Shown in pieces: positions 1 through 62,624 of a DNA stretch of 64,000 nucleotides. Under the pieces are notes generated by a model, which made no database searches, had not been told where the DNA came from, and saw nothing but the letters and a program-made list of their open reading frames with translations. Origin of the DNA: Macrostomum lignano (taxonomy: Eukaryota); the NCBI GenBank assembly GCA_002269645.1, contig NIVC01002098.1:28343-92342 (forward strand). The letters run 5' to 3'. The translations under genes and the position numbers were made by a program. Numbering within the stretch: position 1 is the stretch's first letter; each line of letters begins with the position of its first letter.

Positions 1-20885
<20,885 letters not shown>

Positions 20886-22680: not shown

Positions 22681-24699
22681 TTCCCCTTGTGTAGTGCTGG
22701 ATTGATTTTATTAAAATAATTGTGTCAACAGTAGTATGCAGGACTGCATGTAGCACAAAGGCCCGTCCCGTCCGTCCTAAGCTTTTGTTCTCATCTCTCA
22801 TCTCTGAAAAGCTCATAATTTTTCTTTGTCTTTGTATACTTACTTTACATACTGAGCATTAGAAAAAAGAACTCAATCGGCCGTGTTTCATTTTCTCAGC
22901 GCGCACGCACGCAGTAACGAGCTCGGAGTTCGAACAAAGACGATATGAGTACGAATTCTTAAACAATTCTCGGCCCTCAGTCTAGTGCTTTAGTGTCACC
23001 TTCCAGTGCCTGAATGAAACGTACAGAATTTAACCTTTTATTCCTGCTCCGGCTTGCCCATAATTTAAATTCCATGTTGCGATGCATCGTTCACTTAACT
23101 GGTGCTTGCTTGCTTAATACTGAGTCATTCTGATGTCAAATATTAATTCTTATATAGCCGAGTCATACAAAAGAACAGTCAGGCTTGTTATAGTATGGTA
23201 CTTTATTGTTATGGTTATAGTCAGATTAGCGATTCAAATTCGAAATTCGTGACACTCTGTCAGTGGTGAATGTTGATTGACTGAAAATATATTAGTTGAA
23301 TTTAAGCCTGTTAGCCTGACACTTCACGACATTGCAGTTCAGTAGGTAATTCTGTATAGTATAAAAAATAAGGACTTCATTATTAAACTTACCTTAGCAA
23401 TCGATTTTAGCAGAGCTGTAGGAGTTATCGGCTTTGCTTCAATATAGTAGGTACTCGTAAATATAAATATAAATATACGCTGATATAAGGTTACCAATTT
23501 ACAACACTTTGAGGGCTTTTTAGGCCGTCGGAATACTTTAAATCTTATATTGTATGGTTTCCAAGAGCTTACCGAAGTGAAATATGCAAGCTATGGGGAT
23601 TAGGGGACGAGAGGAGAGAATGGGTCAAAGCGCCGCGTCGGTGGGTCGGCTTGCGTCAGCTGTATAGACAGTGGAATCCTTTGCCGGGGGTGAAGGCAGG
23701 GATTGGGAGAACTATGCTTAGTTTGGAGGTAAGGGAGGACTATAGCAGTTGCGGATTGTAAAGTTTCGGCAAGGAGGAGGGCTGTTGTAAGGGATTTCAA
23801 AAATGAATGAGGAGCTTGCGCTGTGCGCTGGTGCTGCCTAAGGTCTTCTTCCTTCCTTCTCCCCTCCAAAGCCCCAGTTAAACTTTCTATATATAAAGCC
23901 CTTTTTTGGCCATGCGTGGTCCTCCTCGCGCTTCCCCAGCCAATTGGGTGTGAGCAGTTTGCGGACAGGCTGAGGCTGTGCATGGAGTGGCTGCAGGGGG
24001 AGCCCTCATAACATGGTGAAATGAGTCGTCCACACAATATCCAGATGCTCATGGCTGGCCATTGAATCAGAGTGTGTTCTGCATCCCATTATTTGCTGAT
24101 ACTAAAATAGCCTTCCCAGCTACGGTGGCAACTCCGTCCACCTGTGTACACGATGAGGTGGATTGTAAAATGCTAATAAGATAATCCATAGCTGATGATG
24201 GAGATTGGGGAACTGGAAGTTTTCCCTTGAATCGCTTGTTCCGTATCGATCGATTCAAAAGCAGTCTTCAGTCTCACAAGAAAGATCTTAGTGGATATTG
24301 AAAGAATTCCTTCAGATCAAATCTTTTGAACTATCTTGCCCATCCGGATTTGCTAGCGCATTTAATCAAAACGAGTTTAATTGAAAAAAAGAATTTACAT
24401 TCACAATTTAATTCGAAACTTGGTGCTTGAGCGTGACAAGTCTCAGTATTGGCATTGGGCAAAACAACAGCTGCAGTTCACAAAGGCCAAAGTTTACAGC
24501 AAAATCGATAATCCAATCTTATCCATCCAGCTGTTTTCTTTCTCCAAACAGACTCGACTCGCTCCACAGCGCTCCATAACTGCACAGCTCCTCTACGAGC
24601 GTGCACATGTATTATGACTCTCATACGCATCATCTGTGAATACCCTTCCAACAATGGTACCCACCAGTTAAACAACACCGGCGTGTATGACACCAGTTC

Positions 24700-25352
24700 C
24701 CACTTGTTAGACATCAGTTCTCACTTGTTAGACATCAGTTTCCACTAGTTTGACATCAGTTCTCACTTGTTAGACATCAGTTTCCACTAGTTTGACATCA
24801 GTTCCCACTAGTTTGACATCAGTTCCCACGTGTTTGACATCAGTTCCCACTAGTTTGACATCAGTTCTCACTTGTTAGACATCAGTTTCCACTAGTTTGA
24901 CATCAGTTCCCACTAGTTTGACATCAGTTCCCACGTGTTTGACATCAGTTCCCACTAGTTTGACATCAGTTCCCACGTGATTGACGTCAGTACCCACTTG
25001 TTAGACATCAGTTCCCACGTGTTTGACATCAGTTCCCACGTGTTTGACATCAGTTCCCACGTGTTTGATATCAGTTCCCACTTGTTAGACATCAGTTCCC
25101 ACGTTTGACATCAGTTCCCACGTGTTTGACATCAGTTCCCACTTGTTAGACATCAGTTCCCACGTGTTTGACATCAGTTCCCACGTGTTTGACATCAGTT
25201 CCCACTTGTTAGACATCAGTTCCCACGTGTTTGACGTCAGTACCCACTAGTTTGACATCAGTTCCCACTTGTTTGACATCAGTTCCCACTTGTTAGACAT
25301 CAGTTCCCACTTGTTAGACATCAGTTCCCACTAGTTTGACATCAGTTCCCAC
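24700..25352. repeat. 21-bp minisatellite (GACATCAGTTCCCACGTGTTT) upstream of plexin
   Basis: About 30 tandem units; contains CACGTG and TGACATCA/TGACGTCA. Confidence 0.95.
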
Positions 25353-28041
25353 CTGTAAAGGCAACAGTTTCAAGACATGTAAATATACAGGTTAAATAAA
25401 ATTGTTAGAAGTAGGTATAAATAAGCGCAAACCTGTTAGACATAGTGCTCCCTGTTAGACAAGCAATGGGTGCTCATCAACTGGTTTTATAGACGTGCAG
25501 ATCTTTTGCACAATATATGGATTCATAAATTTATTACTGAAATACAAAATTATTAGTAAAAAATAACCCTTATAATTATCAGTTAAACGGGCATTCAGCA
25601 AGTAAATTAACAAAGCACACGGTTAAATAGATTCGCACACATTCACTATTATGAATAATTCCTGATGATAAATGCAAGGCAAGGCTGGAAGCTTTTATAA
25701 AATGCCTGCAGACGAAGCGCAGACGGACACCGCTGCCGTCAGCTGGCAAATAAATGCATCGCTAGCTGCTGCACCCTCTTTCACTAATAGTATCTATACG
25801 CACCGAGCTTTGCATCCCTCTTCCATCGAGGGCAAAAAACGCGAGAGAGGAAAAAAATGGGAGAGTGAACCAACAAGAGGGAGGATGTGACCCAACAGAT
25901 TGCAATGCAAGGGTCGCTACGAAACTCTTCTTCACCCATACAAAGCTCTCTGCATGCATCCTTCACGACTGTTTAGTCTATTTGCATTGGATATAGCTAT
26001 GGCTGAATCGGAACATTATAAATTCTCGTATAGTACGCTTGAAAAATGTATGCATTTTTTGCATGGTATTCGATAATCTTCTGACACGACCCAGCAGCGC
26101 GCTGCAGCCCCGCATACTGTCCCTCGATCCTTCATTATATACATAAATAGCCTTACAGGATAAGAGGCGCTTCTTCGACCCGTCGTACACAGTCCTGCGT
26201 CTGCCTATTACCCGGTAGCTGCTGTATGGCTGGGATGACGGTATACAGCCGCATATTCGAGCAACCGCAGGCCGATCCTGCATGAATAGTTGAAGGATCC
26301 CTGATGAGGAAGAATGACCACTACACAGAGAAATTAGGAGTACTTCGTAATTATCTACTGCAAACAGATCTTTCATCTGCAGCATAATTTGCCTCTAATC
26401 TGCCAATTGAATCTGCATAATAAAAACACGATGAAAAATCGTGCGTGCGTACACATTACATGTACATGGTAGTTGTAAATTCTCTCCGCTTATTTTGACC
26501 CCAACAACAGGGGTCAGACTTTAAGGACACTGAGCTGCAGTCTGCAGCAGCATCCTCTCGATTTTTTGTAAAAATGGCACCACCAAGCCGATCACCGCAT
26601 TCCATACTGCAACTCTGTATATTGGGCGCATTATTGAATACATGTATTTAGTATAATGTTAAGTGCAGCGTTGGGCAAATTTCCAGCACTTCCGGCACTA
26701 ATTAATAGTTACCTTTTTCAAAGTAACAACTTGCCCACACTGGTTAAGTGCGAGCTAGCACTATTTGCTTCAAAGAGCAAAATCTGTTACTCTACAGGTC
26801 ATTTTGGTTTATCTAATCGCGTAGGATGCTTTATACAGTGCATACATGTATGCTTAGCATGCTACTAAACGATTTTCTAATCGTGTCGAATTTTGCAACA
26901 ACTTCTGTATGCTGTATATAATATACCAGACAAAGATACTGTGGATATACAGTATATATTTAATAATTCATGAATAAAAGCTGGAAGAAAAATATAAGCT
27001 GCCAATTAACAGCAAAGAAGAACAAGAAGATTATGCGTTAATATTGATAAGCTGATTTGAAGAAAGAATTAAAGAAAAGAAAGATGGAAAAAAGCCAGAG
27101 TGGGAAAGATCGTAAATTAAGCTTGGAAGAAAAATTCTAATTTTGATAAGCTGATCGAGAGACAGAGGCACCTGCATATATTTTAGAATCTTATGTAGTT
27201 TGAGTGCTTCTTGCATGGGCTGCGTTTAATAAAACAAGAGAAAGGGATAAATAAAAACGCCGTAATATTTTCTGCCGATTGGGAAATAATAATTTTTCCT
27301 AATTGCTGGGCGGGTCTTACTAATCTAATTTTTTCCCAGGGAATACTGAAACAGTGAAACTGCAACACCGCCGACAGAAAGCAGCACTGGCACCACCGAT
27401 GAGGAGCTAAGAAAGTGACCGAATATTGCTGCACGTTTCTTACATAACGTAATTTACGCCATGCCTTTCTTTCGCTGGCATTTTTAAATTGCTTGTTTAA
27501 ATTATTTTTTATTCAAAGAATCGTCGTCGACTTAGTCTGCGTCGGCTGTCGGGCCGTCTGGCGTCTTACTCTTGGCTGGCTTGCGTTGATAGCGCTTGCC
27601 CTTGATCTTTCACTTAGGCCTTCACCTATCTCCTATATATCATGTATGGTGGTTAGATGCTCTTACATGCATAATCATGGACCCTACTGTGTCAAGCACA
27701 AGCAGACCAGACAGCAGCAATTACTAATGATTGTCCCAGGGTTTTTTTTTTGTGCGCAGAGTGTGCGTATGCACCCTAAATTTTAAAATCGCACCCTGAA
27801 ATTAAAAAAGTAGGTGCGGTTTAGGTGCGGTCTTATAACCATTTTTCTTTAAAGGCTTAACCATGCTTAAGCTATTTTTTATGCACTGCCTTAAAATATG
27901 AAACAAAATAACTCTTTAAATCCTATTAAGTCATATAGGCGATATAGCCTATAGCTATAGCCTTATGTAAGATATTAAAATATACATTCCCAGTTGTCAG
28001 AAATGTGAGCAATATGAGGGTTTCACGAGAGATATTCAGAC

Positions 28042-28376
28042 AGGGGCTCCCTAAAACACGCCCCGCACCGGGCCCCAAACCGCTACACATTATAACATTT
28101 TTTGTCAATGCAGTATTTGATTGCAAGGAAAAGTTAAAATAGTAATGGAATAAACATCTTTATTTATTTTTTTAAATATTATTTTTTTATATTCTCGTTT
28201 TCATTATTAATATCACTTATTGTTCACCAAATTTTATATTTCAAAGTAAAAAAACTAAATTTAATAAAAACTTGAAGCTTAACAGAAAACGCATTCTGAA
28301 GTGTCTTTAGTTATAGTCCAATTTGTTTTAATGTGTAGCGCTGCAGGGCGGTGCGGGGCGTGTTTTAGGGAGACCC
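28042..28376. mobile_element. Small MITE (hAT- or P-like) in the Sola2-like left TIR
   Basis: TIR (C)AGGGGCTCCCTAAAACACGCCCCGCACCG / CGGTGCGGGGCGTGTTTTAGGGAGACCC; flanked by ATTCAGAC at 28034-28041 and 28377-28384. Confidence 0.8.
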
Positions 28377-29189
28377 ATTCAGACCACCCGTATATACACG
28401 TTAGGCGGTATAGAACACGGCAAAAACCGCCTATAAGGCAGTCCGTATCATGCTATATGATACAGTAGCATGCTATAGACCGCCTTTTTTATGCGCACAA
28501 GGGCCAAATATGGCACAAATTTGAACAGACGTTTCTGCTTATTTTTTAGTTCACTAATGCAAAGTAGGCCTAGCGATTTTACTAACCTACTACGCTACTA
28601 TTCTCTAGTACAGTATTTTAGTGTCACTAGAATGCTAGATAAATATTAGGTCAGGATGACTTAGTTACAACTTACAAGTGTAAGTGTTAACATTTAACAT
28701 TATTTTATGTAGGCCTACTAAGTACTAGCTGTTTATTATTTCCACAATATTAATAGGCCCAGCGAATTAATATTAGAACAGGAGGAGAACAATACGACTC
28801 GACTTAAAGTTCAATAAGTGAACTTGGATGGCGCTCAGTTTCAGTTTGTAGCTAGGCCTATGCACAATTTTGTAACTGAATGCAATAACTGTGTGACTAA
28901 GCTAGGCCTAGGGCTATATATTCAATATTCTTTTTTCTGAACCCTGAATCCTGAGTTTAGGAGAGAAACTATTTAGTAAAGCTAGCTATATTGATAGATA
29001 TATTGAACAACCATAATTTAGGGTTCTAATATACTATACTAATAGCCTATTATATATATTCCATAAATGGATGTATTTTTTATTTTTTATTTTATTGATA
29101 AATTGGGTTCTATTCTACTATTTTATGTTATAGGTTGAGCCTGAAATTAGTATTTAGTATTTAGAGGTTCTATATTTTTTTTAACCTTC

Positions 29190-31440
29190 CCTTTCCCCAT
29201 AACCTGCTAGCCTTCCCTACATGGTTACACCCTACTGCCCTTGCTTTACCATACCTTACCCTGATGGCCTTCCTACAACACTTGCTACCTTTTCTTATCA
29301 ATACAAGCCTTTCCCATACCTTACTGCCCTTCATTGTCTTTTATGGGCCTTTTCCATACCCTGCTGTCTTTCACAAACCTTGCTGCTCTTCAATGTATCC
29401 TGCTTGGCCTTCATTGTATATTGTTGGCCTTCCCACATGGCCATACCTTGCTGGCTTTTCCCATATCCTGCTAGCCTTCCCCACACCCTACTGTCTTTCC
29501 CCATACCCTGCTGTCTTTCCCCTACCCTGCTGTCCTTCCCCACACCCTTGCCAGCCTTCCTTACTCCTTGCTAGATTTCCCCACACCCTGCCAGCTTCCC
29601 CACACCCTGCCAGCTTCCCCACATCCTGCTCGCCTTCCCTACTCCATGCTACCCTTCCCCACACCCTGCTGTCCTTCCCCACATCCTGCTGGCCTTCCCT
29701 ACTCCCTGCTACCCTTCCCCACACCCTGCTGTCCTTCCCCATCAATGCAGGCCTTCCTCACTCCCTGCTGGCATTCCCCACACCCTGCCGGCCTTCCCCA
29801 CATCCTGCTGGCCTTCCCTACTCCTTGCTACCCTTCCCCACACCCTGCCGGCCTTCCCCACATCCTGCTGGCCTTCCCTACTCCCTGCTACCCTTCCCCA
29901 CACCCTGCTGTCCTTCCCCACACCCTGCTTGTCTTCACTACCAATGCAGGCTTTCCCTACACCCTGCTGTCCTTCCCCATACCCTGCTGTCTTTCCCCTA
30001 CCCTGCTGTCCTTCCCCACACCCTGCCAGCCTTCCTTACTCCTTGCTGGCTTTCCCCACACCCTGCTGGCTTCCTCACATCCTGCTAGACTTCCCCACAC
30101 CCTGCCAGCTTCCCCACATCCTGCTGGCCTTCCCTACTCCTTGCTACCCTTCCCCACACCCTGCCGGCCTTCCGCACACCCTGCTGGCTTTCCTTACTCC
30201 CTGCTACCCTTCCCCACACCCTGCTGTCCTTCCCCACATCCTGCTGGCCTTCCCTACTCCCTGCTACCCTTCCCCACACCCTGCTGTCCTTCCCCATCAA
30301 TGCAGGCCTTCCTCACTCCCTGCTGGCATTCCCCACACCCTGCTGTCCTTCCCCACACCCTGCCTGCCTTCCCTACTGCTGGCCTTCCCTATTTCCTGCT
30401 ACCCTTCCCCACACCCTGCCGGCCTTCCCCACACCCTGCCGGCTTCCCCACACCCTGTCAGCCTTCCCTACTGCTGGCCTTCCCTTTTTCCTGCTACCCT
30501 TCCCCACACCCTGCCGGCCTTCCCCACACCCTGCCGGCTTCCCCACTTCCTGCTGGCCTTCCCTACTCCTTGCTACCCTTCCCCACACCCTGCCGGCTTC
30601 CCCACTTCCTGCTGGACTTCCCTACTCCCTGCTACCCTTCCCCACACCCTGCCAGCCTTCTCTACTGCTGGCCTTCCCTATTTCCTGCTACCCTTCCCCA
30701 CACCCTGCTGTCCTTCCCCATCAATGCAGGCCTTCCTCACTCCCTGCTGGCATTCCCCACACCCTGCCGGCCTTCCCCACACCCTGCCGGCTTCCCCACA
30801 TCCTGCTGACCTTCTCTACTCCCTGCTACCCTTCCCCACACCCTGCCGGCTTCCCCACACCCTGTCAGCCTTCCCTACTGCTGGCCTTCCCTTTTTCCTG
30901 CTACCCTTCCCCACACCCTGCCGGCCTTCCCCACACCCTGCCGGCTTCCCCACTTCCTGCTGGCCTTCCCTACTCCCTGCTACCCTTCCCCACACCCTGC
31001 CGACTTCTCCACATCCTGCCGGCTTCTCCACATCCTGCCGGCCTTCCCTATTTCCTGCTACCCTTCCCCACACCCTGCCGGCCTTCCCCACATCCTGCTC
31101 GCCTTCCCTACTCCCTGCTAACCTTCCCCACACCCTGCTGTCCTTCCCCACATCCTGCTGGCCTTCCCTACTCCCTGCTACCCTTCCCCACACCCTGCTG
31201 TCCTTCCCCATCAATGCAGGCCTTCCTCACTCCCTGCTGGCATTCCCCACACCCTGCCGGCTTCCCCACATCCTGCTGACCTTCTCTACTCCCTGCTACC
31301 CTTCCCCACACCCTGCTGTCCTTCCCCACACCCTGCCTGCCTTCCCTACTGCTGGCCTTCCCTATTTCCTGCTACCCTTCCCCACACCCTGCCGGCCTTC
31401 CCCATACCCTGCTGTCATTTTCCACACCCTGCCACTCTAC
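29190..31440 (+). repeat. C-rich ~20-21-bp minisatellite (CCTTCCCCACACCCTGCTG..) in left foldback arm
   Basis: Tandem units; reverse-complement array at 37320-39300. Confidence 0.95.
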
Positions 31441-31998
31441 CTCTCACAGGCTACCCCTCCCAGACAGCCCTCCCAGACAGCCCTCCCAGACAGCCCTCCC
31501 AGACAGCCCTCCCAGACAGCCCCTCCAGGCTAACCGGACTCTACCCCTCCCAGGCAGCCCTTCCGGGCTTTATCTCCCACTCAACCTCTTCCAGACAGCG
31601 CTCCCAGGCTACCCTTCCTGGCTACTCTTGCCAGGCTACCCCTCTCGGGCTCCTCTCCCACTCTACCCCTCCCAGGCAGCGCTCCCCCTTCCATGGCAAC
31701 CACTTCCAGGCTATCTCCCACTGTGCCCTTGAGTACTGTCTCCATTTATGTTCAAAACTGAGAAGATTGTTTCGTTTCGGTATTATTTAAAAATATAACA
31801 CTATGCATCGTTATTTACTTCAGACGCTTCACTCTTACCATTTCAGGTGCGTACATGCGAGTCAGCTAACGCTGACGCCGCACTTTGTATTCGGCTTTCC
31901 AACGGGGAACTGTGCGTTTATGAAAGCCATTTGGGATTTGGAATGCCAGAAAAGAAATTCTATTTTGCAAGGATCCGATAAATGCTGCCGCTACGGCT

Positions 31999-32345
31999 GC
32001 AGTGACCACTGGCTCAAGCGGAGGACGATCGCAGGACTGTCTGCTGCCTGCCGCTTGCTGCAGTGACCGCCGGCTCAAGCGGAGGACGATCGCAGGACTG
32101 TCTGCTGCCTGCCGCTTGCTGCAGTGACCGCCGGCTCAAGCGGAGGACGATCGCAGGACTGTCTGCTGCCTGCCGCTTGCTGCAGTGACCGCCGGCTCAA
32201 GCGGAGGACGATCGCAGGACTGTCTGCTGCCTGCCGCTTGCTGCAGTGACCGCCGGCTCAAGCGGAGGACGATCGCAGGACTGTCTGCTGCCTGCCGCTT
32301 CGGCTGCAGTGACCGCCGGCTCAAGCGGAGGACGATCGCTGCTCC
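31999..32345 (+). repeat. 61-bp CpG-rich tandem repeat at inner end of left arm (about 6 copies)
   Basis: GCAGTGACCGCCGGCTCAAGCGGAGGACGATCGCAGGACTGTCTGCTGCCTGCCGCTTGCT starting at 31999, 32060, 32121, 32182, 32243, ~32305; inverted copies at 37040-37188. Confidence 0.95.
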
Positions 32346-33239
32346 GCGTGCTATCATCCAGTCCGGTTCCGTTTCGACCTTAACGAACAGTGGCAAAGTG
32401 AGGGTTATTTAATAACTATGTTTATTTCCTGAACGATTGTCTGAAGTGATGCGTGTTCGTGGGACTCACACCCTGGCGATGCGCAGTCCTGTACCAGCGG
32501 TTTGTAGTTGCTGTGTAGCTGAAGTTTTTGCGGGCAGCTCTATGTTGCGCGCATTACTTCAGTTGTTTTTGCGTAGCTGCATAAAGTTTTTCTATCCAAG
32601 CGGCACATTACCTTTGCGTTTATTGAGAGCTATAATTATTTTTTGTCCGAATAACAAATAAAAAAGCTTTTTTCTCGACCGATGTCACCCGGTAATTTGG
32701 CTGTTGCGCCACGCATTTTAGTGCAGTTTTGAAAGGTCAAATCGTCCAAGTAGTTTTCTAATTTTTTCACTTTGTGTTACACTTATTTGAGAAATTTCGT
32801 TCGTGCAAAAGAAATGACCAGACTGCAAGTCGCGGTTTGAATTTCGGATCGCGGCGGCCTGAAAAGTCTCTCATCCTGCTCAGAATGTTAAACTATCCTT
32901 AGCTAATGGCAAACTATCCACATAGTCTGGCTAATTTGCTACCTCAAGTAAGCTAGGCTTAAAAATAGCACCAAAATTGGGTTGCATGAACAAGCTCGCA
33001 CTAGCAAAAGCAAGCACGGCTAGAATGGAGATTAGCACAAGAGCTCAAGTATTTTGGAGCAAGAGCGTATTGACACTGACGCAACTCACGCAAGTATTTC
33101 ACCTACATGTATGTTCAATCATGGATTAGTGCCAGTATGCACACGAGTATGTTTGACCTAGCTGCAGAGGAGATCATCCGGCGGATGCAGCAATCAGGAG
33201 GCGAAGAAGACCGCCCAATTCCGCTAGCCTCTGGCGACC

Positions 33240-33532
33240 ATGAATGACTTCCATCGAAGTGATGTCCCTCCGGGGGCGTCGGTCTCGCTTGCAGCGCGGT
33301 ACCGGGTGAGCATCGATATGCTCTCGGGCCTGCAAGCGTCGGAGAGTTGGGCCGGGGTGAGTGAGTGGTGAAGACCGGGTAGTGGCAGATAAATTGTTCT
33401 GCATTTTTACTGCCTGTTGAGCGGCAGAAAAGCTTGGGGCACCGCGCACGGCTCCTCAAGTACCTGGCCCTGAAGGAAGCGGTGGCGAGAGAAGCAGCCA
33501 TGCATGCCCGGAGAGGGCCCATGTACATGTAA
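33240..33532 (+). CDS. Candidate two-exon small ORF (~73 aa) in foldback spacer
   Basis: ATG 33240, 39 codons to GGG|GTGAGT, acceptor CAG| at 33427, KSLGHRARLLKYLALKEAVAREAAMHARRGPMYM*; no homology recognised. Confidence 0.25.
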
Positions 33533-33561
33533 ATGCTCTTAAGATCCCTGAGGTTGAGCCT

Positions 33562-33699
33562 AAGGAAGGCTTGTGTGTAAACGTAGCCACTTATGTAGTA
33601 AATAGAGGCTTTTTCCTCGGTAGAAATTCGAGCAAGGGATAAACTTACCTGTAGCTCATCAAAACTGACATTCTCTTCAATTTGATGGGTTCGGCCTTT
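33562..33699 (-). pseudogene. Probable remnant of P-element/THAP9-type transposase C-terminal region
   Basis: Minus frame KGRTHQIEENVSFDELQVSLSLARISTEEKASIYYISGYVYTQ; EEKASIYYISGYV (33618-33580) resembles the YIxGYV motif of P transposases (recalled, not searched). Confidence 0.55.
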
Positions 33700-35024
33700 C
33701 TAAGCCTATATAGCTTCGGGCCTCAGAATTCGGAAATGAATCACTTAGAACTCTGGCCTCTCACTCCTGTCAGATGGTCAGCCCCATGGTAGCCAGATTG
33801 TGGGCGAGCAGCAAGGTCCTATAGCTAGGAGAAGACAGCGAGAGACAAGCAGGGAGAATTTGAAAGGTAGAGATTAGCTAATCCGCAGATTAACTAACCC
33901 GCTGCCACCAGTCCGTGCGCCCCGGCTCACCAAACCGGAGCTATCGAAATCGGACTTCCGACTAGAGGGGCACTGCACTTACCTGCCATCTAGTCTTTTA
34001 GCTGTCTAAATCTCGAAGTCATAGCCGAATAGAACGGACGCTGCTGGGACTAAGATCGCATTGGCCATGCAGGGACAGAGGACTTTTGCAGGGGGTTCTT
34101 GCACTGGCGAGCCTTTATACACTACCAAATGTACTATTTCATTACCAAATTCCCAGAAGTACATGTATAAGTACACGTAACTGCACGCTTTTGGAACTAA
34201 ATGTGCGTTAACACGTCGACAGATAGCGATGATGTAGATGTATTGTCACTTTTGGAGACCTTCAGACTAATATTTATCTCGTTTTAGCCGCTTAGCTGCC
34301 TGAGACAGTGCGAAAGCGCCAGTCTGGCACTTAATTTGCATGCTTAACATAATGATTTCTTAGATCGACTGATTGACTGGGAACTGTGCCGCTTCCGGTC
34401 CACTGTGACCTCTGCCTCTAGATTTAGCTGCTCATCTCAGCTGGCGTTGCGAAAAATAAAGAAAACGCCAAGTCTTTAACTTCCAGATTTAACTTTCTCA
34501 CTTAATCCGCAATCCTAAACACTTTAGATTGAGTTAGAGCAAATGGCTACTTTTAATATTAACTAACACTTCTGCCTCGAGATTGGCACACAAAAGCAAG
34601 TAAGCAAAAGTGCAAATCCTATCAGACTACCTAGGAAGGGGTTAGACAAAGGGTGCACCCAGTTAAGCAGGTCAAAAGAGCCTCTCACCCAACTAATCGG
34701 AGGACCTATCTGCCGGTAGCCAAGGAATCCACAGAGACCGAAACACTCAGATGGTATGCTGCTGCTGATCTTAACTGACGCGCGACGCTGTTGCTCCTCA
34801 CTTGCCGGTTGTCGTTGCTACTCTTAGATCACTGCCGGGAGATATTGATGATGCTTCTCAGGGGGAACTTAGCTTTTGAAGACGAAACTGCCGGGGGAAG
34901 GAGGATCAGATCGGCAGGACCGTAGGGGGAAGAGCCAGAAGGCAGTATCAGGCCAAGTTGAGCGCCCCAGGCCTTGGCAAGGACAAAAACCGGGAGATAT
35001 TTCGAGCGCAGTTAGAGTTGCCGC

Positions 35025-35081
35025 CTTTTATAGCTCTCACGCGGCCGATTTGTTATAACGCACGCTGAATTTTCCGATTGG
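35025..35081 (-). promoter_or_regulatory. Pol II promoter-like CCAAT plus TATA box in foldback spacer
   Basis: Minus strand CCAAT (35081-35077) followed about 45 nt later by TATAAAAG (35032-35025), pointing toward the transposase remnant. Confidence 0.45.
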
Positions 35082-35139
35082 CTGAGAGCTTTTGTTAAAA
35101 CTCCGCCGAACGACGAAAACGCCAAAAACTGCTGCACGA

Positions 35140-35420
35140 TCCTTCACAAGACCGAAACTTCATAAGACCGAAATTTCACAACGCCGAAACACCATACTTC
35201 ACAAGACCGAAACTTCATAAGTTCAAACTTCGTTACTACAAATAAAAGTATTTCGTGGTAACGACGAGGCAGCAAAAAAGGCAGCAAGTTCGCAAGTCTT
35301 GTGAAGGGCCCAGTATTTTAAGCTTTGGGGTTGTGAAACTTCGGTCTTATGAAGTTTCTGTCTTGTGAAGTGCCCTGCATTTTGAGCTTTCGGCGTTGTG
35401 AAATTTCGGTCTTATGAACC
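35140..35420. mobile_element. Small MITE-like inverted-repeat element in foldback spacer
   Basis: Repeated CACAAGACCGAAACTTCATAAGACCGAAATTTCACAACGCCGAAA with inverted copies at 35330-35418; TSD not resolved. Confidence 0.6.
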
Positions 35421-37319
35421 CCCCCCCCATGTAGCTAGTGCATGTGCACTTGCCAAGCACGTCACAGAGAAGGCAAAACTTTTCCCGATATATTGTGCTT
35501 CTCAAATCAAATACTCGTACGTATTTAAATTAATAACATGCAATCCGTGTTTCCCGTTCGTTATTTTCAGCAGTACAGCATTTTTGCACCCCCTCATAAT
35601 AGGTGCCCCTCATTACTCATGTTGGCCTCCTAAACTTGGACCGCCCCCTCCCAAAATGAAATTCTAGATCCGCCACTGCTCGTATATGATAAGACTGACT
35701 GAATTTACTATTACTAATATACCTATACTAGTTATAAATCATGTCTCAATCCGATGGAAACAACTTACGTATGTAAATGTCCATGTACCAGGAAAGTCAT
35801 GGCTATTTAAAAAGTGGCAGGATGTCAGGCTATGAGAGCACGAGACTTTTCCACAGAGGCTTTTCTTGCCGAGCTTTCCTCTAATTTTTAACCAACAGGT
35901 GCTGCAGAGACAGAGGGCGAGAAGGAGAAAGGGAGGCCAATAGGGGCAGATAAACTATTGAGACTACTGTAATGTAAAATCATACCTCTCGTAAAATCAT
36001 GTAAAATCATGTAAAATCACTTTATACCTCTCGCCATATGGCTCTACCTCCCACTATTCTTTGTGACCATATTTGTGTCATCATCAAAAGAGAATTCGAT
36101 AAAATAGGAATGTTTCAGGACATGACAGAGCGAATTATCGTAAAAAGCATAGTTAAAAGCAGTGAAGTCTGTTTTATTTTAGAGGCACATGTTTACAATA
36201 CTCAGTTAAGTATATACATGTACTCGTAAAACTGCACATTGACAAAAGACAATGAAAAACTCTTGTCGAAAAAATGCGCTGCATAGTTCTCTCAAACTCG
36301 ACAAGGGGGGGACAAAAAACTGGTTACAGCATTACAGAGCGAGAAAAAGAGCGTCAGCGTTTGATGGTAGTGCAATATTGCAAAGAAGTCACGGATTAAA
36401 TGTTCTATACGCCACGGGCACAGAGAAGTGTGACCAAACATTTATACGGCTACGTCGGCTAACAGCTAATTTCTGTCCAATGTGGCTGAATAGTCATACA
36501 TGTCGTAGTCGTCACCGTCGTCTTCTTTCACCTCAGAGGATCCTGCGTGCACTCTGCGTCCTATGAATAGGCAGCAGCATAATGCACATTGCTTTGTCTC
36601 ATCTCGATACCTGCCAATGAACGAGAGAAAAAGTCCTTGTATTTAAAATGCAAATGCATGATGCAAAGCATTCCAATACAGTTCATAGCTAATCTGCATT
36701 GTTAGCACTTGATGCTGGAGTGACTATGAGCGGAGAAGCTGAATAGGTTCTGTAAGCGACCAACACAATTCACTGATTTCACTAGGAAGAAGCTAAATAC
36801 ATGCCATCTTACCATCTACGTACTCTTGTTTCAAACGACCTCATTTAACGTATTCTGCTGATGATATTGTAGAGTGTATAAGCGGCAGCATATAATAGTC
36901 GTCTTTTTTTCCTCACTGCTAATTAAACGAGAAGATAAATAACTGGCATAGATCTCCTCTAAAAGAAATCGGATAATATGCTTCTTCATTAGTCCTTCGA
37001 TCGCCCTTAGCACTCACAACACTAGTAGATGATAGCACGCGGAGCAGCGATCGTCCTCCGCTTGAGCCGGCGGTCACTGCAGCCGAAGCGGCAGGCAGCA
37101 GACAGTCCTGCGATCGTCCTCCGCTTGAGCCGGCGGTCACTGCAGCTGAAGCGGCAGGCAGCAAACAGTCCTGCGATCGTCCTCCGCTTCTGGAAGAGGT
37201 TGAGTGGGAGATGAAGCCCGGAAGGGCTGCCTGGGAGGGGTAGAGTCGGGTTAGCCTGGAGGGGCTGTCTAGGAGGGCTGTCTGGGAGGGCTGTCTGGGA
37301 GGGGTAGCCTGTGAGAGGT

Positions 37320-39300
37320 AGAGTGGCAGGGTATGGGAAATGACAGCAGGGTATGGGGAAGGCCGGCAGGGTGTGGGGAAGGGTAGCAGGAAATAGGGAA
37401 GGCCAGCAGTAGGGAAGGCAGGCAGGGTGTGGGGAAGGACAGCAGGGTGTGGGGAAGGGTAGCAGGAAATAGGGAAGGCCAGCAGTAGAGAAGGCTGGCA
37501 GGGTGTGGGGAAGGGTAGCAGGGAGTAGGGAAGGCTAGCAGGATGAGGGGAAGCAGGCAGGGTGTGGGGAAGGCCAGCAGGGTGTGGGGAAGGCCGGCAG
37601 GGTGTGGGGAAGGGTAGCAGGAAATAGGGAAGGCCAGCAGTAGGGAAGGCTGGCAGGGTGTGGGGAAGGACAGCAGGGTGTGGGGAAGGGTAGCAGGGAG
37701 TAGGGAAGGCCAGCAGGAAGTGGGGAAGCCGGCAGGGGGTGGGGAAGGCCGGCAGGGTGTGGGGAAGGGTAGCAGGATGTGGGGAAGGCCGGCAGGGTGT
37801 AGGGAATGCCAGAAGGGAGTGGGAAAGGCCTGCATTGATGGGGAAGGACAGCAAGGTGTAGGGAAAGCCTGCATTGGTAGTGAAGATTAGCAGGGTGTGG
37901 GGAAGGACAGCAGGGTGTGAGGAAGGACAGCAGGGTGTGGGGAAGGGTAGCAAGGAGTAGGGAAGGCCAGCAGGAAGTGGGGAAGCCGGCAGGGTGTGGG
38001 GAAGGCCGGCAGGGTGTGGGGAAGGGTAGCAAGGAGTAGGGAAGGCCAGCAGGATGTGGGGAAGGCCGGCAGGGTGTGGGGAATGCCAGCAGGGAGTGAG
38101 GAAGGCCTGCATTGATGGGGAAGGACAGCAGGGTGTAGGGAAAGCCTGCATTGGTAGTGTAAGACAAGCAGGGTGTGGGGAAGGACAGCAGGGTGTGGGG
38201 AAGGGTAGCAGGGAGTAAGGAAAGCCAGCAGGGTGTGGGGAAGGCCGGCAGGGTGTGGGGAAGGGTAGCAGGGAGTAAGGAAAGCCAGCAGGGTGTGGGG
38301 AAGGCCGGCAGGGTGTGGGGAAGGGTAGCAAGGAGTAGGGAAGGCCAGCAGGATGTGGGGAAGCTGGCAGGGTGTGGGGAAGTCTAGCAGGATGTGAGGA
38401 AGCCAGCAGGGTGTGGGGAAAGCCAGCAAGGAGTAAGGAAGGCTGGCAGGGTGTGGGGAAGGACAGCAGGGTAGGGGAAAGACAGCAGGGTATGGGGAAA
38501 GACAGCAGGGTATGGGGAAGGACAGCAGGGTGTAGGGAAAGCCTGCATTGGTAGTGAAGACAAGCAGGGTGTGGGGAAGGACAGCAGGGTGTGGGGAAGG
38601 GTAGCAGGGAGTAGGGAAGGCCAGCAGGATGTGGGGAAGGCCGGCAGGGTGTGGGGAAGGGTAGCAAGGAGTAGGGAAGGCCAGCAGGATGTGGGGAAGG
38701 CCGGCAGGGTGTGGGGAATGCCAGCAGGAAGTGAGGAAGGCCTGCATTGATGGGGAAGGACAGCAGGGTGTGGGGAAGGGTAGCAGGGAGTAGGGAAGGC
38801 CAGCAGGATGTGGGGAAGGACAGCAGGGTGTGGGGAAGGGTAGCATGGAGTAGGGAAGGCGAGCAGGATGTGGGGAAGCTGGCAGGGTGTGGGGAAGCTG
38901 GCAGGGTGTGGGGAAATCTAGCAAGGAGTAAGGAAGGCTGGCAAGGGTGTGGGGAAGGACAGCAGGGTAGGGGAAAGACAGCAGGGTATGGGGAAAGACA
39001 GTAGGGTGTGGGGAAGGCTAGCAGGATATGGGAAAAGCCAGCAAGGTATGGCCATGTGGGAAGGCCAACAATATACAATGAAGGCCAAGCAGGATACATT
39101 GAAGAGCAGCAAGGTTTGTGAAAGACAGCAGGGTATGGAAAAGGCCCATAAAAGACAATGAAGGGCAGTAAGGTATGGGAAAGGCTTGTATTGATAAGAA
39201 AAGGTAGCAAGTGTTGTAGGAAGGCCATCAGGGTAAGGTATGGTAAAGCAAGGGCAGTAGGGTGTAACCATGTAGGGAAGGCTAGCAGGTTATGGGGAAA
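37320..39300 (-). repeat. Inverted copy of the C-rich minisatellite in right foldback arm
   Basis: CAGCAGGGTGTGGGGAAGG units; outer part near-identical to the left arm. Confidence 0.95.
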
Positions 39301-40531
39301 GGGAAGGTTAAAAAAAATATAGAACCTCTAAATACTAAATACTAATTTCAGGCTCAACCTATAACATAAAATAGTAGAATAGAACCCAATTTATCAATAA
39401 AATAAAAAATAAAAAATACATCCATTTATGGAATATATATAATAGGCTATTAGTATAGTATATTAGAACCCTAAATTATGGTTGTTCAATATATCTATCA
39501 ATATAGCTAGCTTTACTAAATAGTTTCTCTCCTAAACTCAGGATTCAGGGTTCAGAAAAAAGAATATTGAATATATAGCCCTAGGCCTAGCTTAGTCACA
39601 CAGTTATTGCATTCAGTTACAAAATTGTGCATAGGCCTAGCTACAAACTGAAACTGAGCGCCATCCAAGTTCACTTATTGAACTTTAAGTCGAGTCGTAT
39701 TGTTCTCCTCCTGTTCTAATATTAATTCGCTGGGCCTATTAATATTGTGGAAATAATAAACAGCTAGTACTTAGTAGGCCTACATAAAATAATGTTAAAT
39801 GTTAACACTTACACTTGTAACTAAGTCATCCTGACCTAATATTTATCTAGCATTCTAGTGACACTAAAATACTGTACTAGAGAATAGTAGCGTAGTAGGT
39901 TAGTAAAATCGCTAGGCCTACTTTGCATTAGTGAACTAAAAAATAAGCAGAAACGTCTGTTCAAATTTGTGCCATATTTGGCCCTTGTGCGCATAAAAAA
40001 GGCGGTCTATAGCATGCTACTGTATCATATAGCATGATACGGACTGCCTTATAGGCGGTTTTTGCCGTGTTCTATACCGCCTAACGTGTATATACGGCTG
40101 TTCAGACAGACATTCAAAACGACCGTCTGTAACTTCAAACAAAATTGACCCGTTTCAACCATCTTTTTGGCAAATACTTACGCAAGTGTTGGGCGTCAAA
40201 TAAGCTTTAATTTATTAACTGAAGTAAAAATCCTTCTGACATACATTGATTTAAAAATTGCTTAGCAACACTAGCTCTGATTAGAAATCGCTTTACTGTT
40301 GACTAAAATTGTTTTGATCGTAGCAGCCTAAAAGCAGATACTGGATTTAAAAATGCTTCGATTTACTCTATACGCATGTCTCAGCTTTAAAATGACACCT
40401 CAGGTGTTGCAAAAGACAGCTTTGATGCTGAGATATTCGACACTAAACATTGCTTTGCTCAAACTCACATTCGGAAACTTCACTGATTTTTATTCAATAT
40501 TTGTTCAGATGCTTGTCTACTTCTCCATTTA

Positions 40532-40980
40532 TTAACCATCGCATGGAGCCTTGCTAACGTACAAGTGTATGTAGTTACTGTAAATGGGGGGTTTTGTGAC
40601 TCACTTAAACTTGTTTACGCATTCTGCAGCTATTTGCCGCCTTTCATTGGAGTGATTCATGGAGTCCAGTTGATAAATTTCCGCAAATTGGACTGCTTCT
40701 ACGTCAGATCTCAACATTTGGAACCATCCTTGAACTATTTCAGAGTTAAGTGAGCTAATGGCATCAAATGGAAGGCTAGTGCTCATACTCGTAAGCAAAG
40801 CAGGTTCACAATTGAAATGGTTGTATTCATGGCCATCGGATCTAAACTGATCTGTTTTACTTTCACGATTGCTTCGGTCTCAGAAGGAGCAGCAGTTGAT
40901 GGACTGAGGTGAGAAGAAGATGTGTCACGACTTGAGCTGTTTTTAGAAAATATCTTTATCCAATTAAATATTTTCATGCG
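40532..40980 (-). other. Spliced coding remnant inside the Sola2-like element (unknown protein)
   Basis: Overlapping frames MKIFNWIKIF.. and ..EIVQGWFQMLRSDVEAVQFAEIYQLD..KF; 51-nt GTGAGT..TTAG intron at 40604-40554 gives N|KAPCDG*; junction between the two frames unresolved. Confidence 0.3.
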
Positions 40981-42814
40981 GCTCCTTAGGTTGTTCCGAA
41001 TTCCGAGTCTAGAAGTCAAGACAGAAAAAAAGTTAAGAACTGCTACGGTAGTCCGTAGGGATTGGAAAGCTTAGCAGTACATTAGAAATCGCCTGTTCAA
41101 TCTAAAAAGTTTGAAGTACATATAGCTATTGGGTTGCAACAACAGTAGAAAATTTTTTTCCTTTTTATTTTATTCCCACCGCTTACCTCATTCCAATTTG
41201 GATAGCAGAATTGCCACGCAAAAAAAGTAAAAACATAACAATAAACTATTTGCTTCATATTAATTGCCACTGACTGTTAATAAACGCGACGTCAATTTCT
41301 CTCAATAACAATTGGAACATGTTTCTTGTACACTCGTATATTTATTTGAATTGCAAAGCGGTGAAAAAGTCATGATTGGTCGCCATATGTACAAATGTAC
41401 ACTCACAGACTCACTGACTCAGGTACAATCTATGCAATATAAAGGCAGGAATCATTAAAAATCAAATACTTAAGACAGTTTAAGAGAAGTCCAGGTTTAA
41501 ACTGGACATGACTAGAATTTGACAAGTTTCTGATGAAAAACAAGGACATGGCAGCTGCACAAATATCGATAAAAATCAGTGAAATTTCTGAATGTGAGTT
41601 TGCACAAAGCAATTGTTTAGTGTCGAATATCTCAGCATCAAAGCTGTCTTTTGCGACGCCTGAGGTGTCATTTTAAAGCTGAGACATGCGTATAGAGTAA
41701 ATCGAAGCATTTTTAAATCCAGTATCTGCTTTTAGGCTGCTACGATCAAAACAATTTTAGTCAACAGTAAAGCGATTTCTAATCAGAGCTAGTGTTGCTA
41801 AGCAATTTTTAAATCAATGTATGTCAGAAGGATTTTTACTTCAGTTAATAAATTAAAGCTTATTCGACACCCAACACTTGCGTAAGTATTTGCCAAAAAG
41901 ATGGTTGAAGCGGGTCAATTTTGTTTAAAGTTACAGACGATCGTTTCGAATGTCTGTCTGAATATCTCTCGTGAAACCCTCACATTCTAAACAAGACTCA
42001 AGAGAAATTGCACTCTGAGCCTTAAAATCGCACCTTGAAATTTGGCACAAGGTGCGATTTCGCACCTTATCTCTGGCGAAAAAAAAAACCCAGGATTGTC
42101 CATTGGGCTGGGTATTGGCATTGGGTTGCTAAAGTAAATTGCCAATAACAATACTTTCACTATAATGAAAATTATATAACTAGAATATTTACTATATATA
42201 GGTAGGCATATTATATAATTGCATAAGGCATATTTTAAATTAAAAGTAGGTTAACAAGAATTTTGTTTTGTTATAACTTTCTTGACTGAAACAACTTGTA
42301 CTTGAGTTTTTAGCCTACCCAACACTTTTACACATATCCTATTACTAAAAATGGTTTGTATCTATTTATAGGGCCTATAGACTATCTATCTAACTTTTAG
42401 TTTCTAGGCCTAACTAGTAGGCCCTTAACTAATCCTAATCCTATATACTAAAAATGAAAATCTTGCTTGCTTGTAATTTAGATAAGATATGGCTCAAGCT
42501 TAACTAGTAGGCCTAATTTTCTTCAAAATTGCACCATTCAATTAATTAGAAACTTTTCCATGATGGTACATGTTTCTTGGCTAAGAAATTGCACAATGCT
42601 AAGGGGTTCAAAATTAAAAAGTCTTTTTGAAAAGGTCAAATAGACTTTTTGACTTTAAAATGCATTGTAAAAAATGCTAAAAAACTAACTAGCTAAATTC
42701 TGATTGCATCATACTAGGCTTCTATAGTCTATTTCATGCTTAAAGTTATGCCAGAAGAAAACTAATACAATTTTATCATTTACTTATACCAGACTTATGC
42801 CATGCTTATGTACC

Positions 42815-44193
42815 GGTCACCAATAACTTTGGCGATAGTTCACTTCGGTGACAGTCACTTTGGTGACAAGTCACTTCGGCAACAATTAATAACAGCTAAA
42901 GAATGCATTTATAATATATGTATTTTTTGCCAATGAAATTTCATGATTAAAAAAGCAACACAAATTTATATTTAGGTATATTTAGGTATTTAGCTAGGTA
43001 TATTTATTCTCCTACATGCGCAACTGCTAGCTGACCTGGCCGATCTGGCCACTGTAAATTGTGGTAGACTAGGGGTAAGTTGCAAAAATGCCCAGCCTAA
43101 AGAATACAGATGTAGTATTAATTAGATGACGAGACATTTAGCCCTTATTTATAAGACAGTCATAGTTACTCCTGCCATTTACCCAAAATTGCATTAGGGT
43201 TTCTTTCACAAGTAAGTCACATTTTTGGTCAAAAAGTAAGTCGCATGGCCAGTGTAAATCAGGAGGGGTTGTGCATGTATGTTTATTCTCAATTTAATAA
43301 GTAGAAGGTGGGGTTAACACAAGCTCTAGCGGGTTGTAAATATGCATGCATTACTATGTACTTGTACATTAACTGTACGTTAACACAATGTATTTGCCAC
43401 AAGAGATCTCAGTCTACAAAAAAGCCACTTGAACTAATAACAACATTGAGGGCTTTCACAACCGCTTGAACAGTCGGGCTCAATGTGGTCAGCTCCAGTT
43501 CTACCTCCTGGTTAAGCTGCTATACGACAAGGGCCACATAGTCTCTATCGATTTGCAATTGGTGTCACAAGGTGCTCTGAGGTGGTTGCAGCAAAAGAAG
43601 TACTGCCAGTGACAGTCCAAATACTTCAAACTTTGGTTGGAGTATCAAGCTGGAGACTGATCAATTCAGTCACTTCTAGAGGCTTGCAGCAAGCTGAATG
43701 GACCGTAAACTGTCTATGGTGCACCTGCATATGCTTAACTTCTGTAATGCTAAGACTTCTTTGCATGCTACATGTAGCATCTCTGCTTTTAATGCTTTTA
43801 ATGCATGTTTATTTCTCTTTCTTTATTTCTGCAATGGAGTGACACAGTGTATGTGCCCATACATCCCAATATGCCAAATAAATTTATAACAATACTTACA
43901 GTACTATATAATGCAAGTCAATTCATTTTGTACTTTATCATATTTATTGTAAGTTGGCGCCTCTCAATGTCTTTTAGACATGGCGCATCTCAATGTCTTT
44001 TAGACATGGCGGTTTATAACAAAATACTGAAAATTTGTGTTTCTTTTTTAATCCAGATAAATCACACTTTTTAATTGTGAAGTTTCATTGGCAAAAAAGA
44101 TGTCTTTTAGCTGTTAATTGTTGCCAAAGTGATCCAAATGTGTTGCCAAAATGACTGTTGCTGAAGTGACTTGTCACCAAAGTGATTGTAATT
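42815..44193 (+). mobile_element. Decayed Mutator (MULE) element
   Basis: Degenerate TIRs (42815-~42965 vs ~44035-44193) with CACTTCGG/CCAAAGTG subrepeats; 9-bp TSD TTATGTACC / CTATGTACC. Confidence 0.75.
43409..43708 (+). pseudogene. MULE transposase C-terminal remnant with in-frame stops
   Basis: SVYKKAT*TNNNIEGFHNRLNSRAQCGQLQFYLLVKLLY...FKLWLEYQAGD*SIQSLLEACSKLNGP*; RTNNxxEGxH motif of invertebrate MULE transposases. Confidence 0.85.
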
Positions 44194-59950: not shown

Positions 59951-59959
59951 CATACCAGC

Positions 59960-60795: not shown

Positions 60796-60876
60796 ATACC
60801 AGCATTGGCACTCAGCAACCTGTTGTCAAGCGATTGCACGCAGCCCCTTAGCAACCAAGCGCGTCCAGTCTTAGCT

Positions 60877-62526: not shown

Positions 62527-62624
62527 CTGGCGGTTAGCGTTTGACCGGATTAAAATTTCTTAAAAAATTATAAAATCATAATGCTTCACTCTTCCCCTTT
62601 AGGAATCCACCTGGTCTTAATGCC

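What the first reader, a model, noticed from the sequence alone, without database searches (positions are those of the whole stretch)
27737..42093. Four-level nested transposon stack with two elements inserted at the same target site
Seen: hAT MITE (TSD GATTGTCC) contains a Sola2-like element (28016-41981). Its left TIR now reads ATTCAGAC-[MITE 28042-28376]-ATTCAGAC-[foldback 28385-40100]-TTCAGAC. The intact right TIR (41940-41981) shows the pre-insertion sequence ...GAGATATTCAGACAGACATTC. A further MITE sits in the foldback spacer. Inference: two elements hit the same ~8 bp inside another element's TIR, which suggests a sequence-specific target, a shared transposase, or attraction to transposon ends.
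Basis: partly seen in the sequence, partly recalled or inferred. Interest (0 to 1): 0.78.

Follow-up and report, generated by a model that had tools for sequence, protein, structure and literature searches.

The report
Nested flatworm transposons reusing one target
A recently inserted 14.4-kb pile of non-coding "cut-and-paste" transposons in the flatworm Macrostomum lignano is real. Two unrelated elements did land on the same few bases inside a third element's end, but this is a tidy example of known transposon behaviour, not a new mechanism.

Summary
The window is Macrostomum lignano DNA.

- **Empty site.** A 98-99% identical copy of the locus in assembly GCA_002269645.1 lacks all 14,357 bp and keeps a single GATTGTCC. 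The outer 8-bp-TSD (target site duplication) MITE, with everything inside it, is therefore a true and recent insertion.
- **One site.** Removing 28042-40107 restores a gapless 430-bp terminal inverted repeat (TIR) of the second element. Both inner elements therefore occupy one site, and the target is present three times.
- **TSD lengths.** With symmetric ends, the best reading is a 334-bp MITE with a 9-bp TSD ATTCAGACA, inserted first. The 11.7-kb foldback with a 7-bp TSD TTCAGAC came second, on the same centre base.
- **No shared ends.** The two elements share no terminal sequence, so a shared transposase is not supported.
- **Levels.** Only three nesting levels are verified. The "MITE in the spacer" has no TSD.
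- **Not tested.** I could not test whether the site is a family-wide hotspot. No other copy of the three inner families was reachable.

Same-site double insertion with a shared TSD is already documented for P and hobo elements. This is a heterotypic instance of that. Interest is modest.

The parts
27729..27736 (+). Left copy of the outer element's 8-bp target site duplication, GATTGTCC
   Evidence: Direct reading. The homeolog contig has a single GATTGTCC at the empty site.
27737..42093 (+). Outer hAT-like MITE with everything nested in it (14,357 bp). Its own sequence is 27737-28015 plus 41982-42093, about 387 bp. Ends are CAGGGTTTTTTTTTT / CTGGGTTTTTTTTTT.
   Evidence: Absent as one block from NIVC01002670.1. 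A second family copy in L004 4921-5169 has the 8-bp TSD GATAAGCT.
42094..42101 (+). Right copy of the outer TSD, GATTGTCC
28016..41981 (+). E2: long-TIR non-autonomous element, 1,900 bp without its inserts. Ends are GAGGG...CCCTC and flanks are ATAT/ACAT. The left TIR is 28016-28041 plus 40108-about 40540; the right TIR is about 41550-41981.
   Evidence: Gapless TIR reconstruction. TIR identity is about 96%. No Pfam domain in its ORFs.
28034..28042 (+). Target copy 1: ATTCAGAC(A)
28043..28376 (+). 334-bp MITE. TIRs are GGGGCTCCCTAAAACACGCCCCGCACCG / GGGTCTCCCTAAAACACGCCCCGCACCG, with an AT-rich core.
28377..28384 (+). Target copy 2: ATTCAGAC. This is the only sequence between the MITE and the foldback.
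28385..40100 (+). Foldback element, 11,716 bp. Termini are CACCCGTATATAC / CAGCCGTATATAC(rc). Arms are 28385-about 32358 and about 37028-40100. Each arm has about 1.05 kb of unique terminus (99.3% identical between arms) plus 20-bp, 13-bp and 61-bp tandem arrays. The spacer is about 4.7 kb and non-coding.
40101..40107 (+). Target copy 3: TTCAGAC, followed by the rest of the E2 left TIR (AGACATTC...)
41955..41963 (-). The same 9 bp, unoccupied, in the intact right TIR of E2. This is the pre-insertion reference.
35133..35418 (.). Palindromic module of 16-bp units in the foldback spacer.
   Evidence: Inverted repeats. No TSD of 3 bp or more. No other copy.

Best explanation
This is a young stack of non-autonomous cut-and-paste DNA transposons in Macrostomum lignano, present in one homeolog or allele and absent from the other.

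**Shown**
- A roughly 387-bp hAT-like MITE (8-bp TSD) carries a 1.9-kb long-TIR element, E2.
- At bp 19-27 of E2's left TIR, two unrelated elements sit back to back, separated only by one copy of the target.

**Inferred from requiring symmetric TIRs and no mutation**
- The 334-bp MITE inserted first and duplicated 9 bp, ATTCAGACA.
- The 11.7-kb foldback then inserted into the right-hand copy and duplicated 7 bp, TTCAGAC.
- Both staggered cuts are therefore centred on the same base pair.

**Inferred mechanism**
- These were two independent transposition events by different transposases.
- The site was reused because this short stretch is a favoured target. The first insertion copies the favoured core instead of destroying it, so the site stays available.
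- This is the heterotypic version of the 'double insertion at a strong site' already described for P and hobo elements.
For: - The species is M. lignano: 99% and 96% identity to its annotated proteins.
- The empty site has a single GATTGTCC, in flanks 97.8-99.1% identical. This matches the 1.9-2.4% SNP divergence between the S/L1/L2 subgenomes, which rises to 32-36% when long insertions are counted (PMC10733133).
- Removing 28042-40107 restores a gapless TIR.
- All three target copies are perfect and lie exactly at boundaries defined by the TIRs.
- The termini of the two inner elements are unrelated.
- The foldback arms are 99.3-100% identical, which fits the foldback being the latest arrival.
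- A rough rate from this locus is two TSD-flanked window-specific insertions in about 23 kb of shared sequence. At that rate, two further hits in a 1.9-kb element have a probability of about 1%, and the same centre base about 1 in 1,900. Uniform in-situ chance is therefore unlikely.
- Precedent: P and hobo dimers carry one TSD between the two copies and form at the strongest target sites (PMC5932611).
Against: - There is only one instance. No other copy of E2, the MITE or the foldback could be examined, so no target logo exists for any of them.
- The identical sequence in E2's right TIR is unoccupied.
- The order of insertion and the 9/7-bp TSD lengths rest on assuming symmetric TIRs. An 8+8 reading (with an A-to-G change or asymmetric ends) and a foldback-first order are not excluded.
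- If the composite is older than this locus, because it was built elsewhere and moved in as a unit, the time available for a chance coincidence is much longer.
Confidence: 0.5

Rival explanations
1. Pure coincidence. Two independent insertions hit the same base by chance in a genome that is mostly transposons, and the case was noticed because the reader was looking for oddities.
For: - With N insertions in a genome of G bp, about N^2/2G same-site pairs are expected. For G of about 0.76 Gb and N of 10^5 to 10^6, that is about 7 to 650 pairs genome-wide (my arithmetic).
- Homeologs differ by 32-36% when long insertions are counted, so insertion density is extreme.
- The unoccupied identical site in the right TIR shows the site is not compulsory.
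Against: - Both inner TSDs are perfect and the foldback arms are at least 99.3% identical, so the events are recent.
- At the local recent rate of about 1 insertion per 11 kb, a same-base double hit inside a 1.9-kb element, itself inside a 387-bp element, is expected far less than once per genome.
Confidence: 0.2
2. End attraction. The second element was drawn to the terminus of the first, by local hopping, homing, or a transposase or host factor bound at a transposon end. Under this view the underlying 7-9 bases themselves are not what attracted it.
For: - The foldback lies 1 bp (9/7 reading) or 0 bp (8/8 reading) from the MITE terminus.
- The whole event lies 18-26 bp from the E2 terminus.
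- From memory, not checked here: P elements show local reinsertion at or next to resident P ends, and bacterial IS30 targets inverted repeats.
Against: - The two elements have unrelated ends, so one transposase binding both is unlikely.
- Attraction to an end does not predict reuse of exactly the same centre base, whereas a target preference does.
- E2 itself did not insert near an end of the outer MITE. It sits at bp 279 of about 387.
Confidence: 0.12
3. The stack was not built here. It was assembled elsewhere over a longer time, and the outer MITE (or E2) then carried its passengers into this locus as a single 14-kb unit. This concerns history and is compatible with any cause of the site reuse.
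For: - The comparator lacks every layer at once, and no intermediate state is seen.
- The outer TIRs and TSD are intact.
- E2's TIRs differ by about 4%, more than the 0.9-2.2% between the flanks of the two locus copies. E2 may therefore predate the split.
- Elements carrying a nested MITE are known to amplify as units (rice MULEs, PMC3903597).
Against: - Only one comparator copy is available.
- TIR differences can be inherited from a master copy.
- No second copy of any junction was found. The junction-ORF look-ups were negative, though that test is weak.
- A 14-kb passenger load is large for a MITE-sized hAT end pair.
Confidence: 0.3
4. Both inner elements are hAT-type with 8-bp TSDs and are mobilised by the same or closely related transposases. 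Their common target preference (nTnnnnAn) explains the reuse.
For: - ATTCAGAC fits nTnnnnAn, the hAT consensus as I recall it from memory.
- The MITE is flanked by a perfect 8-mer on both sides.
Against: - The foldback's right-hand copy reads GTTCAGAC, so an 8-bp TSD needs a mutation or asymmetric ends.
- Neither terminus matches the other or the outer hAT-like element.
- An nTnnnnAn preference gives only about 16-fold enrichment, far too little to specify one base.
Confidence: 0.08
5. Assembly artefact: a palindromic chimera from long reads.
For: 1,327 nt of the two foldback arms are 100% identical.
Against: - The arms are asymmetric: 101.6 versus 87.6 copies of the 20-bp unit, and a roughly 400-bp indel.
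- There is a 4.7-kb unique spacer.
- The foldback is bounded by exact TIR ends and a TSD.
Confidence: 0.03

Closest known systems
Double insertion of a transposon at one target site (P-element and hobo dimers; McGurk & Barbash 2018, PMC5932611)
   Same: Two elements are separated by exactly one copy of the target duplication, so the target is present three times. These cases are attributed to reuse of strong insertion sites.
   Different: Here the two elements belong to unrelated families and probably have different TSD lengths (9 and 7). The target also lies inside the TIR of a third transposon, not at a promoter.
Nested transposon stacks in repeat-rich genomes, including elements that amplify together with a nested MITE (rice and maize MULEs, PMC3903597)
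   Same: Layered insertions, each with its own TIRs and TSD. The composite may move as a unit.
   Different: This is a flatworm, all layers are non-autonomous DNA elements, and two layers share one site.
Galileo and Foldback-type elements of Drosophila (P superfamily; PMC3573991)
   Same: Very long TIRs that are internally repetitive, with arm-to-arm differences in tandem copy number. TSD of 7 bp.
   Different: - No transposase or THAP-domain coding sequence is present.
- No sequence similarity was tested or expected.
- The arms here are about 3-4 kb, mostly a 20-bp minisatellite.
- Classical Drosophila FB has a 9-bp TSD (from memory).
Sola2 DNA transposons (PMC3627910)
   Same: 4-bp AT-rich flanks (ATAT on one side), like the AWWT/ATAT/AAAT TSDs reported for Sola2.
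   Different: The other flank is ACAT, and there is no Sola2 transposase. The GRG...CYC terminus rule is from memory only.
hAT-derived MITEs
   Same: 8-bp TSD and a short CAGGG-type terminus. Excision or absence leaves one target copy.
   Different: No autonomous partner was identified. Neither observed TSD fits nTnnnnAn.

Membership tests
hAT superfamily (outer MITE) | 8-bp target site duplication | tested here: met
   GATTGTCC on both sides and once at the empty site. A second copy in L004 has GATAAGCT on both sides.
hAT superfamily (outer MITE) | Short TIRs beginning YARNG (rule recalled from memory) | tested here: inconclusive
   One end is CAGGG and the other is CTGGG, in both copies.
hAT superfamily (outer MITE) | Mobilised by a hAT transposase (autonomous partner with matching ends) | not testable with these tools
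   No autonomous copy in the window or in loci L001-L006, and no M. lignano genome search was available.
Sola2 (E2) | 4-bp AT-rich TSD (AWWT; PMC3627910) | tested here: inconclusive
   The flanks are ATAT and ACAT, 3 of 4 identical. No empty site or second copy is available.
Sola2 (E2) | Sola2-type DDE transposase, or ends matching a Sola2 autonomous element | not testable with these tools
   No ORF with a Pfam hit and no protein-database hit.
Foldback / Galileo-like elements (11.7-kb element) | [quoted passage not shown] | tested here: met
   Arms of about 3-4 kb carry 20-, 13- and 61-bp arrays, and the terminal 1.05 kb is 99.3% identical between arms.
Foldback / Galileo-like elements (11.7-kb element) | 7-bp TSD (Galileo) | tested here: inconclusive
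   TTCAGAC on both sides if the ends are the symmetric CACCCG/CAGCCG. An 8-bp reading needs one mismatch. Only one copy is available.
Foldback / Galileo-like elements (11.7-kb element) | P-superfamily (THAP) transposase or its binding sites | tested here: not met
   There is no coding capacity in the spacer or arms apart from minisatellite ORFs. The resemblance is architectural only.
MITE (334-bp element) | Small, non-coding, with TIRs, flanked by a TSD | tested here: met
   334 bp, 28-bp TIR with one mismatch, perfect 8/9-bp flanks.
MITE (334-bp element) | Multi-copy family | tested here: inconclusive
   No second copy in the window or in about 110 kb of other M. lignano loci. The genome itself was not searchable.
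Same-site double insertion (sensu McGurk & Barbash) | The junction between the two elements is exactly one TSD copy | tested here: met
   The 8 bp ATTCAGAC at 28377-28384 are the only bases between the two elements.
Same-site double insertion (sensu McGurk & Barbash) | Both elements belong to the same family (tandem dimer) | tested here: not met
   The termini and interiors are unrelated.

The most novel reading that the evidence does not exclude
The first ~25 bp of E2-type TIRs, or transposon termini more generally in this genome, could be a structural insertion hotspot used by transposases of different superfamilies. That would be a eukaryotic counterpart of inverted-repeat targeting by bacterial insertion sequences, and it would actively drive the stacking of elements in the extremely repeat-rich M. 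lignano genome.
Probability: 0.1. Interest if true: 0.6.

Novelty: new member of a known kind. Interest (0 to 1): 0.3.

Why it matters
**As it stands**
- It is a clean, fully resolved example of nested insertion and same-site reuse.
- It comes with an empty-site comparator, in a regeneration-model flatworm whose three subgenomes differ mostly by recent insertions.
- It shows that at least four non-autonomous DNA-transposon families were mobile after the subgenomes or alleles diverged.
- It provides exact ends and TSDs that could seed a curated repeat library.

**If the site proves to be a recurrent hotspot**
- It would bear on how transposons pile up in "safe" positions inside each other.
- It would bear on how different transposases can converge on one target geometry.

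Tried and rejected
1. **Other copies in the window.** None of the four families has one.
2. **Other copies through proteins.** A concatenated query of 23 transposon-derived ORFs gave no hit. Exact look-ups of a foldback ORF and two junction-spanning ORFs were not on record. The window's HMG-box protein was also not on record.
3. **Sampling other M. lignano loci.** Six loci, about 110 kb, yielded only one more copy of the outer MITE family and one of an unrelated 591-bp MITE.
4. **Exact-pattern scans.** The MITE TIR, the foldback terminus and the E2 terminus gave nothing in the metagenome and prokaryote genome collections, as expected for an animal repeat.
5. **Coding capacity.** There are no Pfam domains in E2 or the foldback spacer. 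The long ORFs in the foldback arms are translated minisatellite.
6. **TIR+TSD scan of the foldback spacer for a fourth-level insert.** Nothing convincing was found.
7. **Shared terminal motifs between families.** Only AT-rich low-complexity 10-mers are shared, so I rejected a shared transposase.
8. **Assembly-palindrome artefact.** Rejected because the arms are asymmetric, the spacer is unique, and the TSD is exact.
9. **Sola2 terminus rule.** The original Sola paper could not be retrieved to check it.


Full report
**Source.** The window is nuclear DNA of the flatworm Macrostomum lignano. An intronless MFS transporter gene at 55370-57451(-) is 99% identical to BOX15_Mlig004039g1. An HMG-box gene at 50545-52587(+) is 96% identical to BOX15_Mlig000086g6. 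Both lie on contig NIVC01002670.1 of GCA_002269645.1.

**Observation.**
- The outer element spans 27737-42093. Its ends are CAGGGTTTTTTTTTT and, reverse-complemented, CTGGGTTTTTTTTTT. It lies between two copies of GATTGTCC.
- Inside it, E2 spans 28016-41981 with ends GAGGG...CCCTC and TIRs of about 430 bp.
- E2's left TIR is interrupted after 26 bp. It reads ATTCAGAC, then a 334/335-bp MITE, ATTCAGAC, an 11,716-bp foldback, TTCAGAC, and then the rest of the TIR.
- Joining 28016-28041 to 40108-40540 gives a sequence that aligns to the reverse complement of the right TIR with no gap at the junction. Both inserts therefore occupy one site and the target is present three times.
- ATTCAGAC occurs nowhere else in the window except in the intact right TIR.

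**Empty site.** Fetching 10 kb around the HMG-box gene of NIVC01002670.1 gave a locus that aligns to the window on both sides of the stack. On the left it matches window 25559-27736 at 99.1%. On the right it matches window 42094-44417 at 97.8%. The two alignments overlap by 8 bp.
- The sequence there reads ...attactaatGATTGTCCattgggc..., with one copy of the target and none of the 14,357 bp.
- The 1-2% flank divergence matches the published divergence between the S, L1 and L2 subgenomes of this neopolyploid: 1.9-2.4% in SNPs, and 32-36% when long insertions are counted (PMC10733133).
- The stack is therefore specific to one homeolog or allele, and it is recent.
- A second copy of the outer family in another contig (L004 4921-5169) has its own 8-bp TSD, GATAAGCT, and the same CAGGG/CTGGG end pair. 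This supports a hAT-like assignment.

**Anatomy of the inner elements.**
- None of them codes for anything recognisable. The long ORFs in the foldback are translated minisatellite.
- The foldback has two arms, 28385-about 32358 and about 37028-40100. Each arm has about 1.05 kb of unique terminus (99.3% identical between arms, with one 1,327-nt stretch at 100%). Next comes a 20-bp array (101.6 copies in one arm, 87.6 in the other), then 13-bp and 61-bp arrays. The arms flank a 4.7-kb unique spacer.
- This architecture, with a 7-bp TSD, resembles Galileo-type foldback elements (PMC3573991). There is no transposase, so the resemblance is not membership.
- E2's flanks are ATAT/ACAT. That is compatible with the AT-rich 4-bp TSDs of Sola2 (PMC3627910) but does not prove it.

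**Re-reading the duplications.**
- The MITE's TIRs are symmetric only if it starts at 28043 (GGGGCTCCC... versus GGGTCTCCC...). The A at 28042 then belongs to the target.
- The foldback's ends are symmetric (CACCCG / CAGCCG) only if it ends at 40100, which leaves a 7-bp TSD.
- The mutation-free history is therefore as follows. The MITE inserted first and duplicated ATTCAGACA (9 bp). The foldback then inserted into the right-hand copy and duplicated TTCAGAC (7 bp).
- The 7-mer is nested centrally in the 9-mer, so both events share the same centre base (A at 28038).
A foldback-first order needs an extra A. Neither is excluded.

**Cause of the reuse.**
- The two elements share no terminal or subterminal sequence and probably differ in TSD length. 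A shared transposase is therefore not supported.
- From this locus, the window lineage gained two TSD-flanked insertions in about 23 kb of shared sequence.
- At that rate, a 1.9-kb element should rarely receive two more insertions, and the same centre base has odds of about 1 in 1,900. A uniform in-situ chance model is therefore unlikely.
- Chance is not excluded if the composite is older than this locus. With 10^5 to 10^6 insertions in 0.76 Gb, tens to hundreds of same-site pairs are expected genome-wide.
- The best-supported mechanism is the documented one. Strong target sites are hit repeatedly, and because insertion duplicates the target, the preferred core survives. P and hobo dimers carry exactly one TSD between the copies and form at the strongest sites (PMC5932611).
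- What differs here is that the two elements are unrelated and the site lies in another element's TIR.
- Attraction to the resident element's end is a weaker rival, because it does not predict reuse of the same centre base.

**History.**
- The comparator lacks all layers at once.
- E2's TIRs differ by about 4% (mostly transitions, many at CpG), more than the two locus copies differ from each other.
- It is therefore possible that the composite was assembled elsewhere and carried in as a unit by the outer MITE. Elements with a nested MITE are known to amplify as units (PMC3903597). This could not be tested.

**What was not confirmed or not possible.**
- The 'further MITE in the spacer' is at best the palindromic 16-bp-unit module at 35133-35418. 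It has no TSD and no other copy. Three levels are shown, not four.
- No other copy of E2, the MITE or the foldback could be reached.

**Verdict.** The structure is real and precisely described, and an empty site now supports it. It is a heterotypic instance of known behaviour (nested insertion plus same-site double insertion), based on a single case. Interest is modest, and the novelty is a new member of a known kind.

Noticed in passing
window 45249-45839: A 591-bp TIR element (CCCTATTGGAA... / CCCTATAGGAA...) with the 8-bp TSD TAAATCAG. It is absent, with a clean empty site, from the homeolog contig. An 86% copy lies in L004 17394-18023. This is a second recent insertion polymorphism at this locus.
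   Followed up: partly
window 44418-44564: A 147-bp indel relative to the homeolog, bounded by a 13-bp overlap. It looks like a microhomology deletion or duplication, not a transposon.
   Followed up: no
window 28016-28041 + 40108-40540 versus 41550-41981: Differences between the two E2 TIRs in the first 330 bp are all transitions, and more than half are CpG to TpG/CpA. This hints at methylation-type decay of this element.
   Followed up: no
window 41933-41957 (E2 right TIR, bp 25-49 of the TIR): A 6-bp stem, ACAGAC/GTCTGT, with a 13-nt loop that contains the palindromes TTCGAA and CGATCG. The stem begins inside the reused target. Its significance is unknown and it could be chance.
   Followed up: no
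window 29441-31432 and 37326-39051: The two foldback arms carry the same 20-bp minisatellite but with 101.6 versus 87.6 copies. The left arm also has about 400 bp extra (31594-31995). The arms therefore evolve independently despite 100% identity over 1.3 kb.
   Followed up: partly
window 1-25000 and 52865-64000: The window is packed with 20-42-bp minisatellite arrays with strong strand skew, for example 9800-11046, 11607-12497, 24684-25356, 52865-54006 and 62620-64000. Several differ in copy number from the homeolog.
   Followed up: no
window 50545-52587 (+) and 55370-57451 (-): Two intronless genes: a SMARCE1/BAP111-like HMG-box protein and a monocarboxylate-transporter-like MFS protein. Both are conserved in the homeolog contig, next to an SNF-family transporter gene.
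   Followed up: partly
window 27860-28015 versus L004 5016-5049: The window's copy of the outer MITE carries about 130 bp next to the E2 insertion point that the L004 copy lacks. The outer family therefore has length variants, and the E2 target region is not present in every copy.
   Followed up: no
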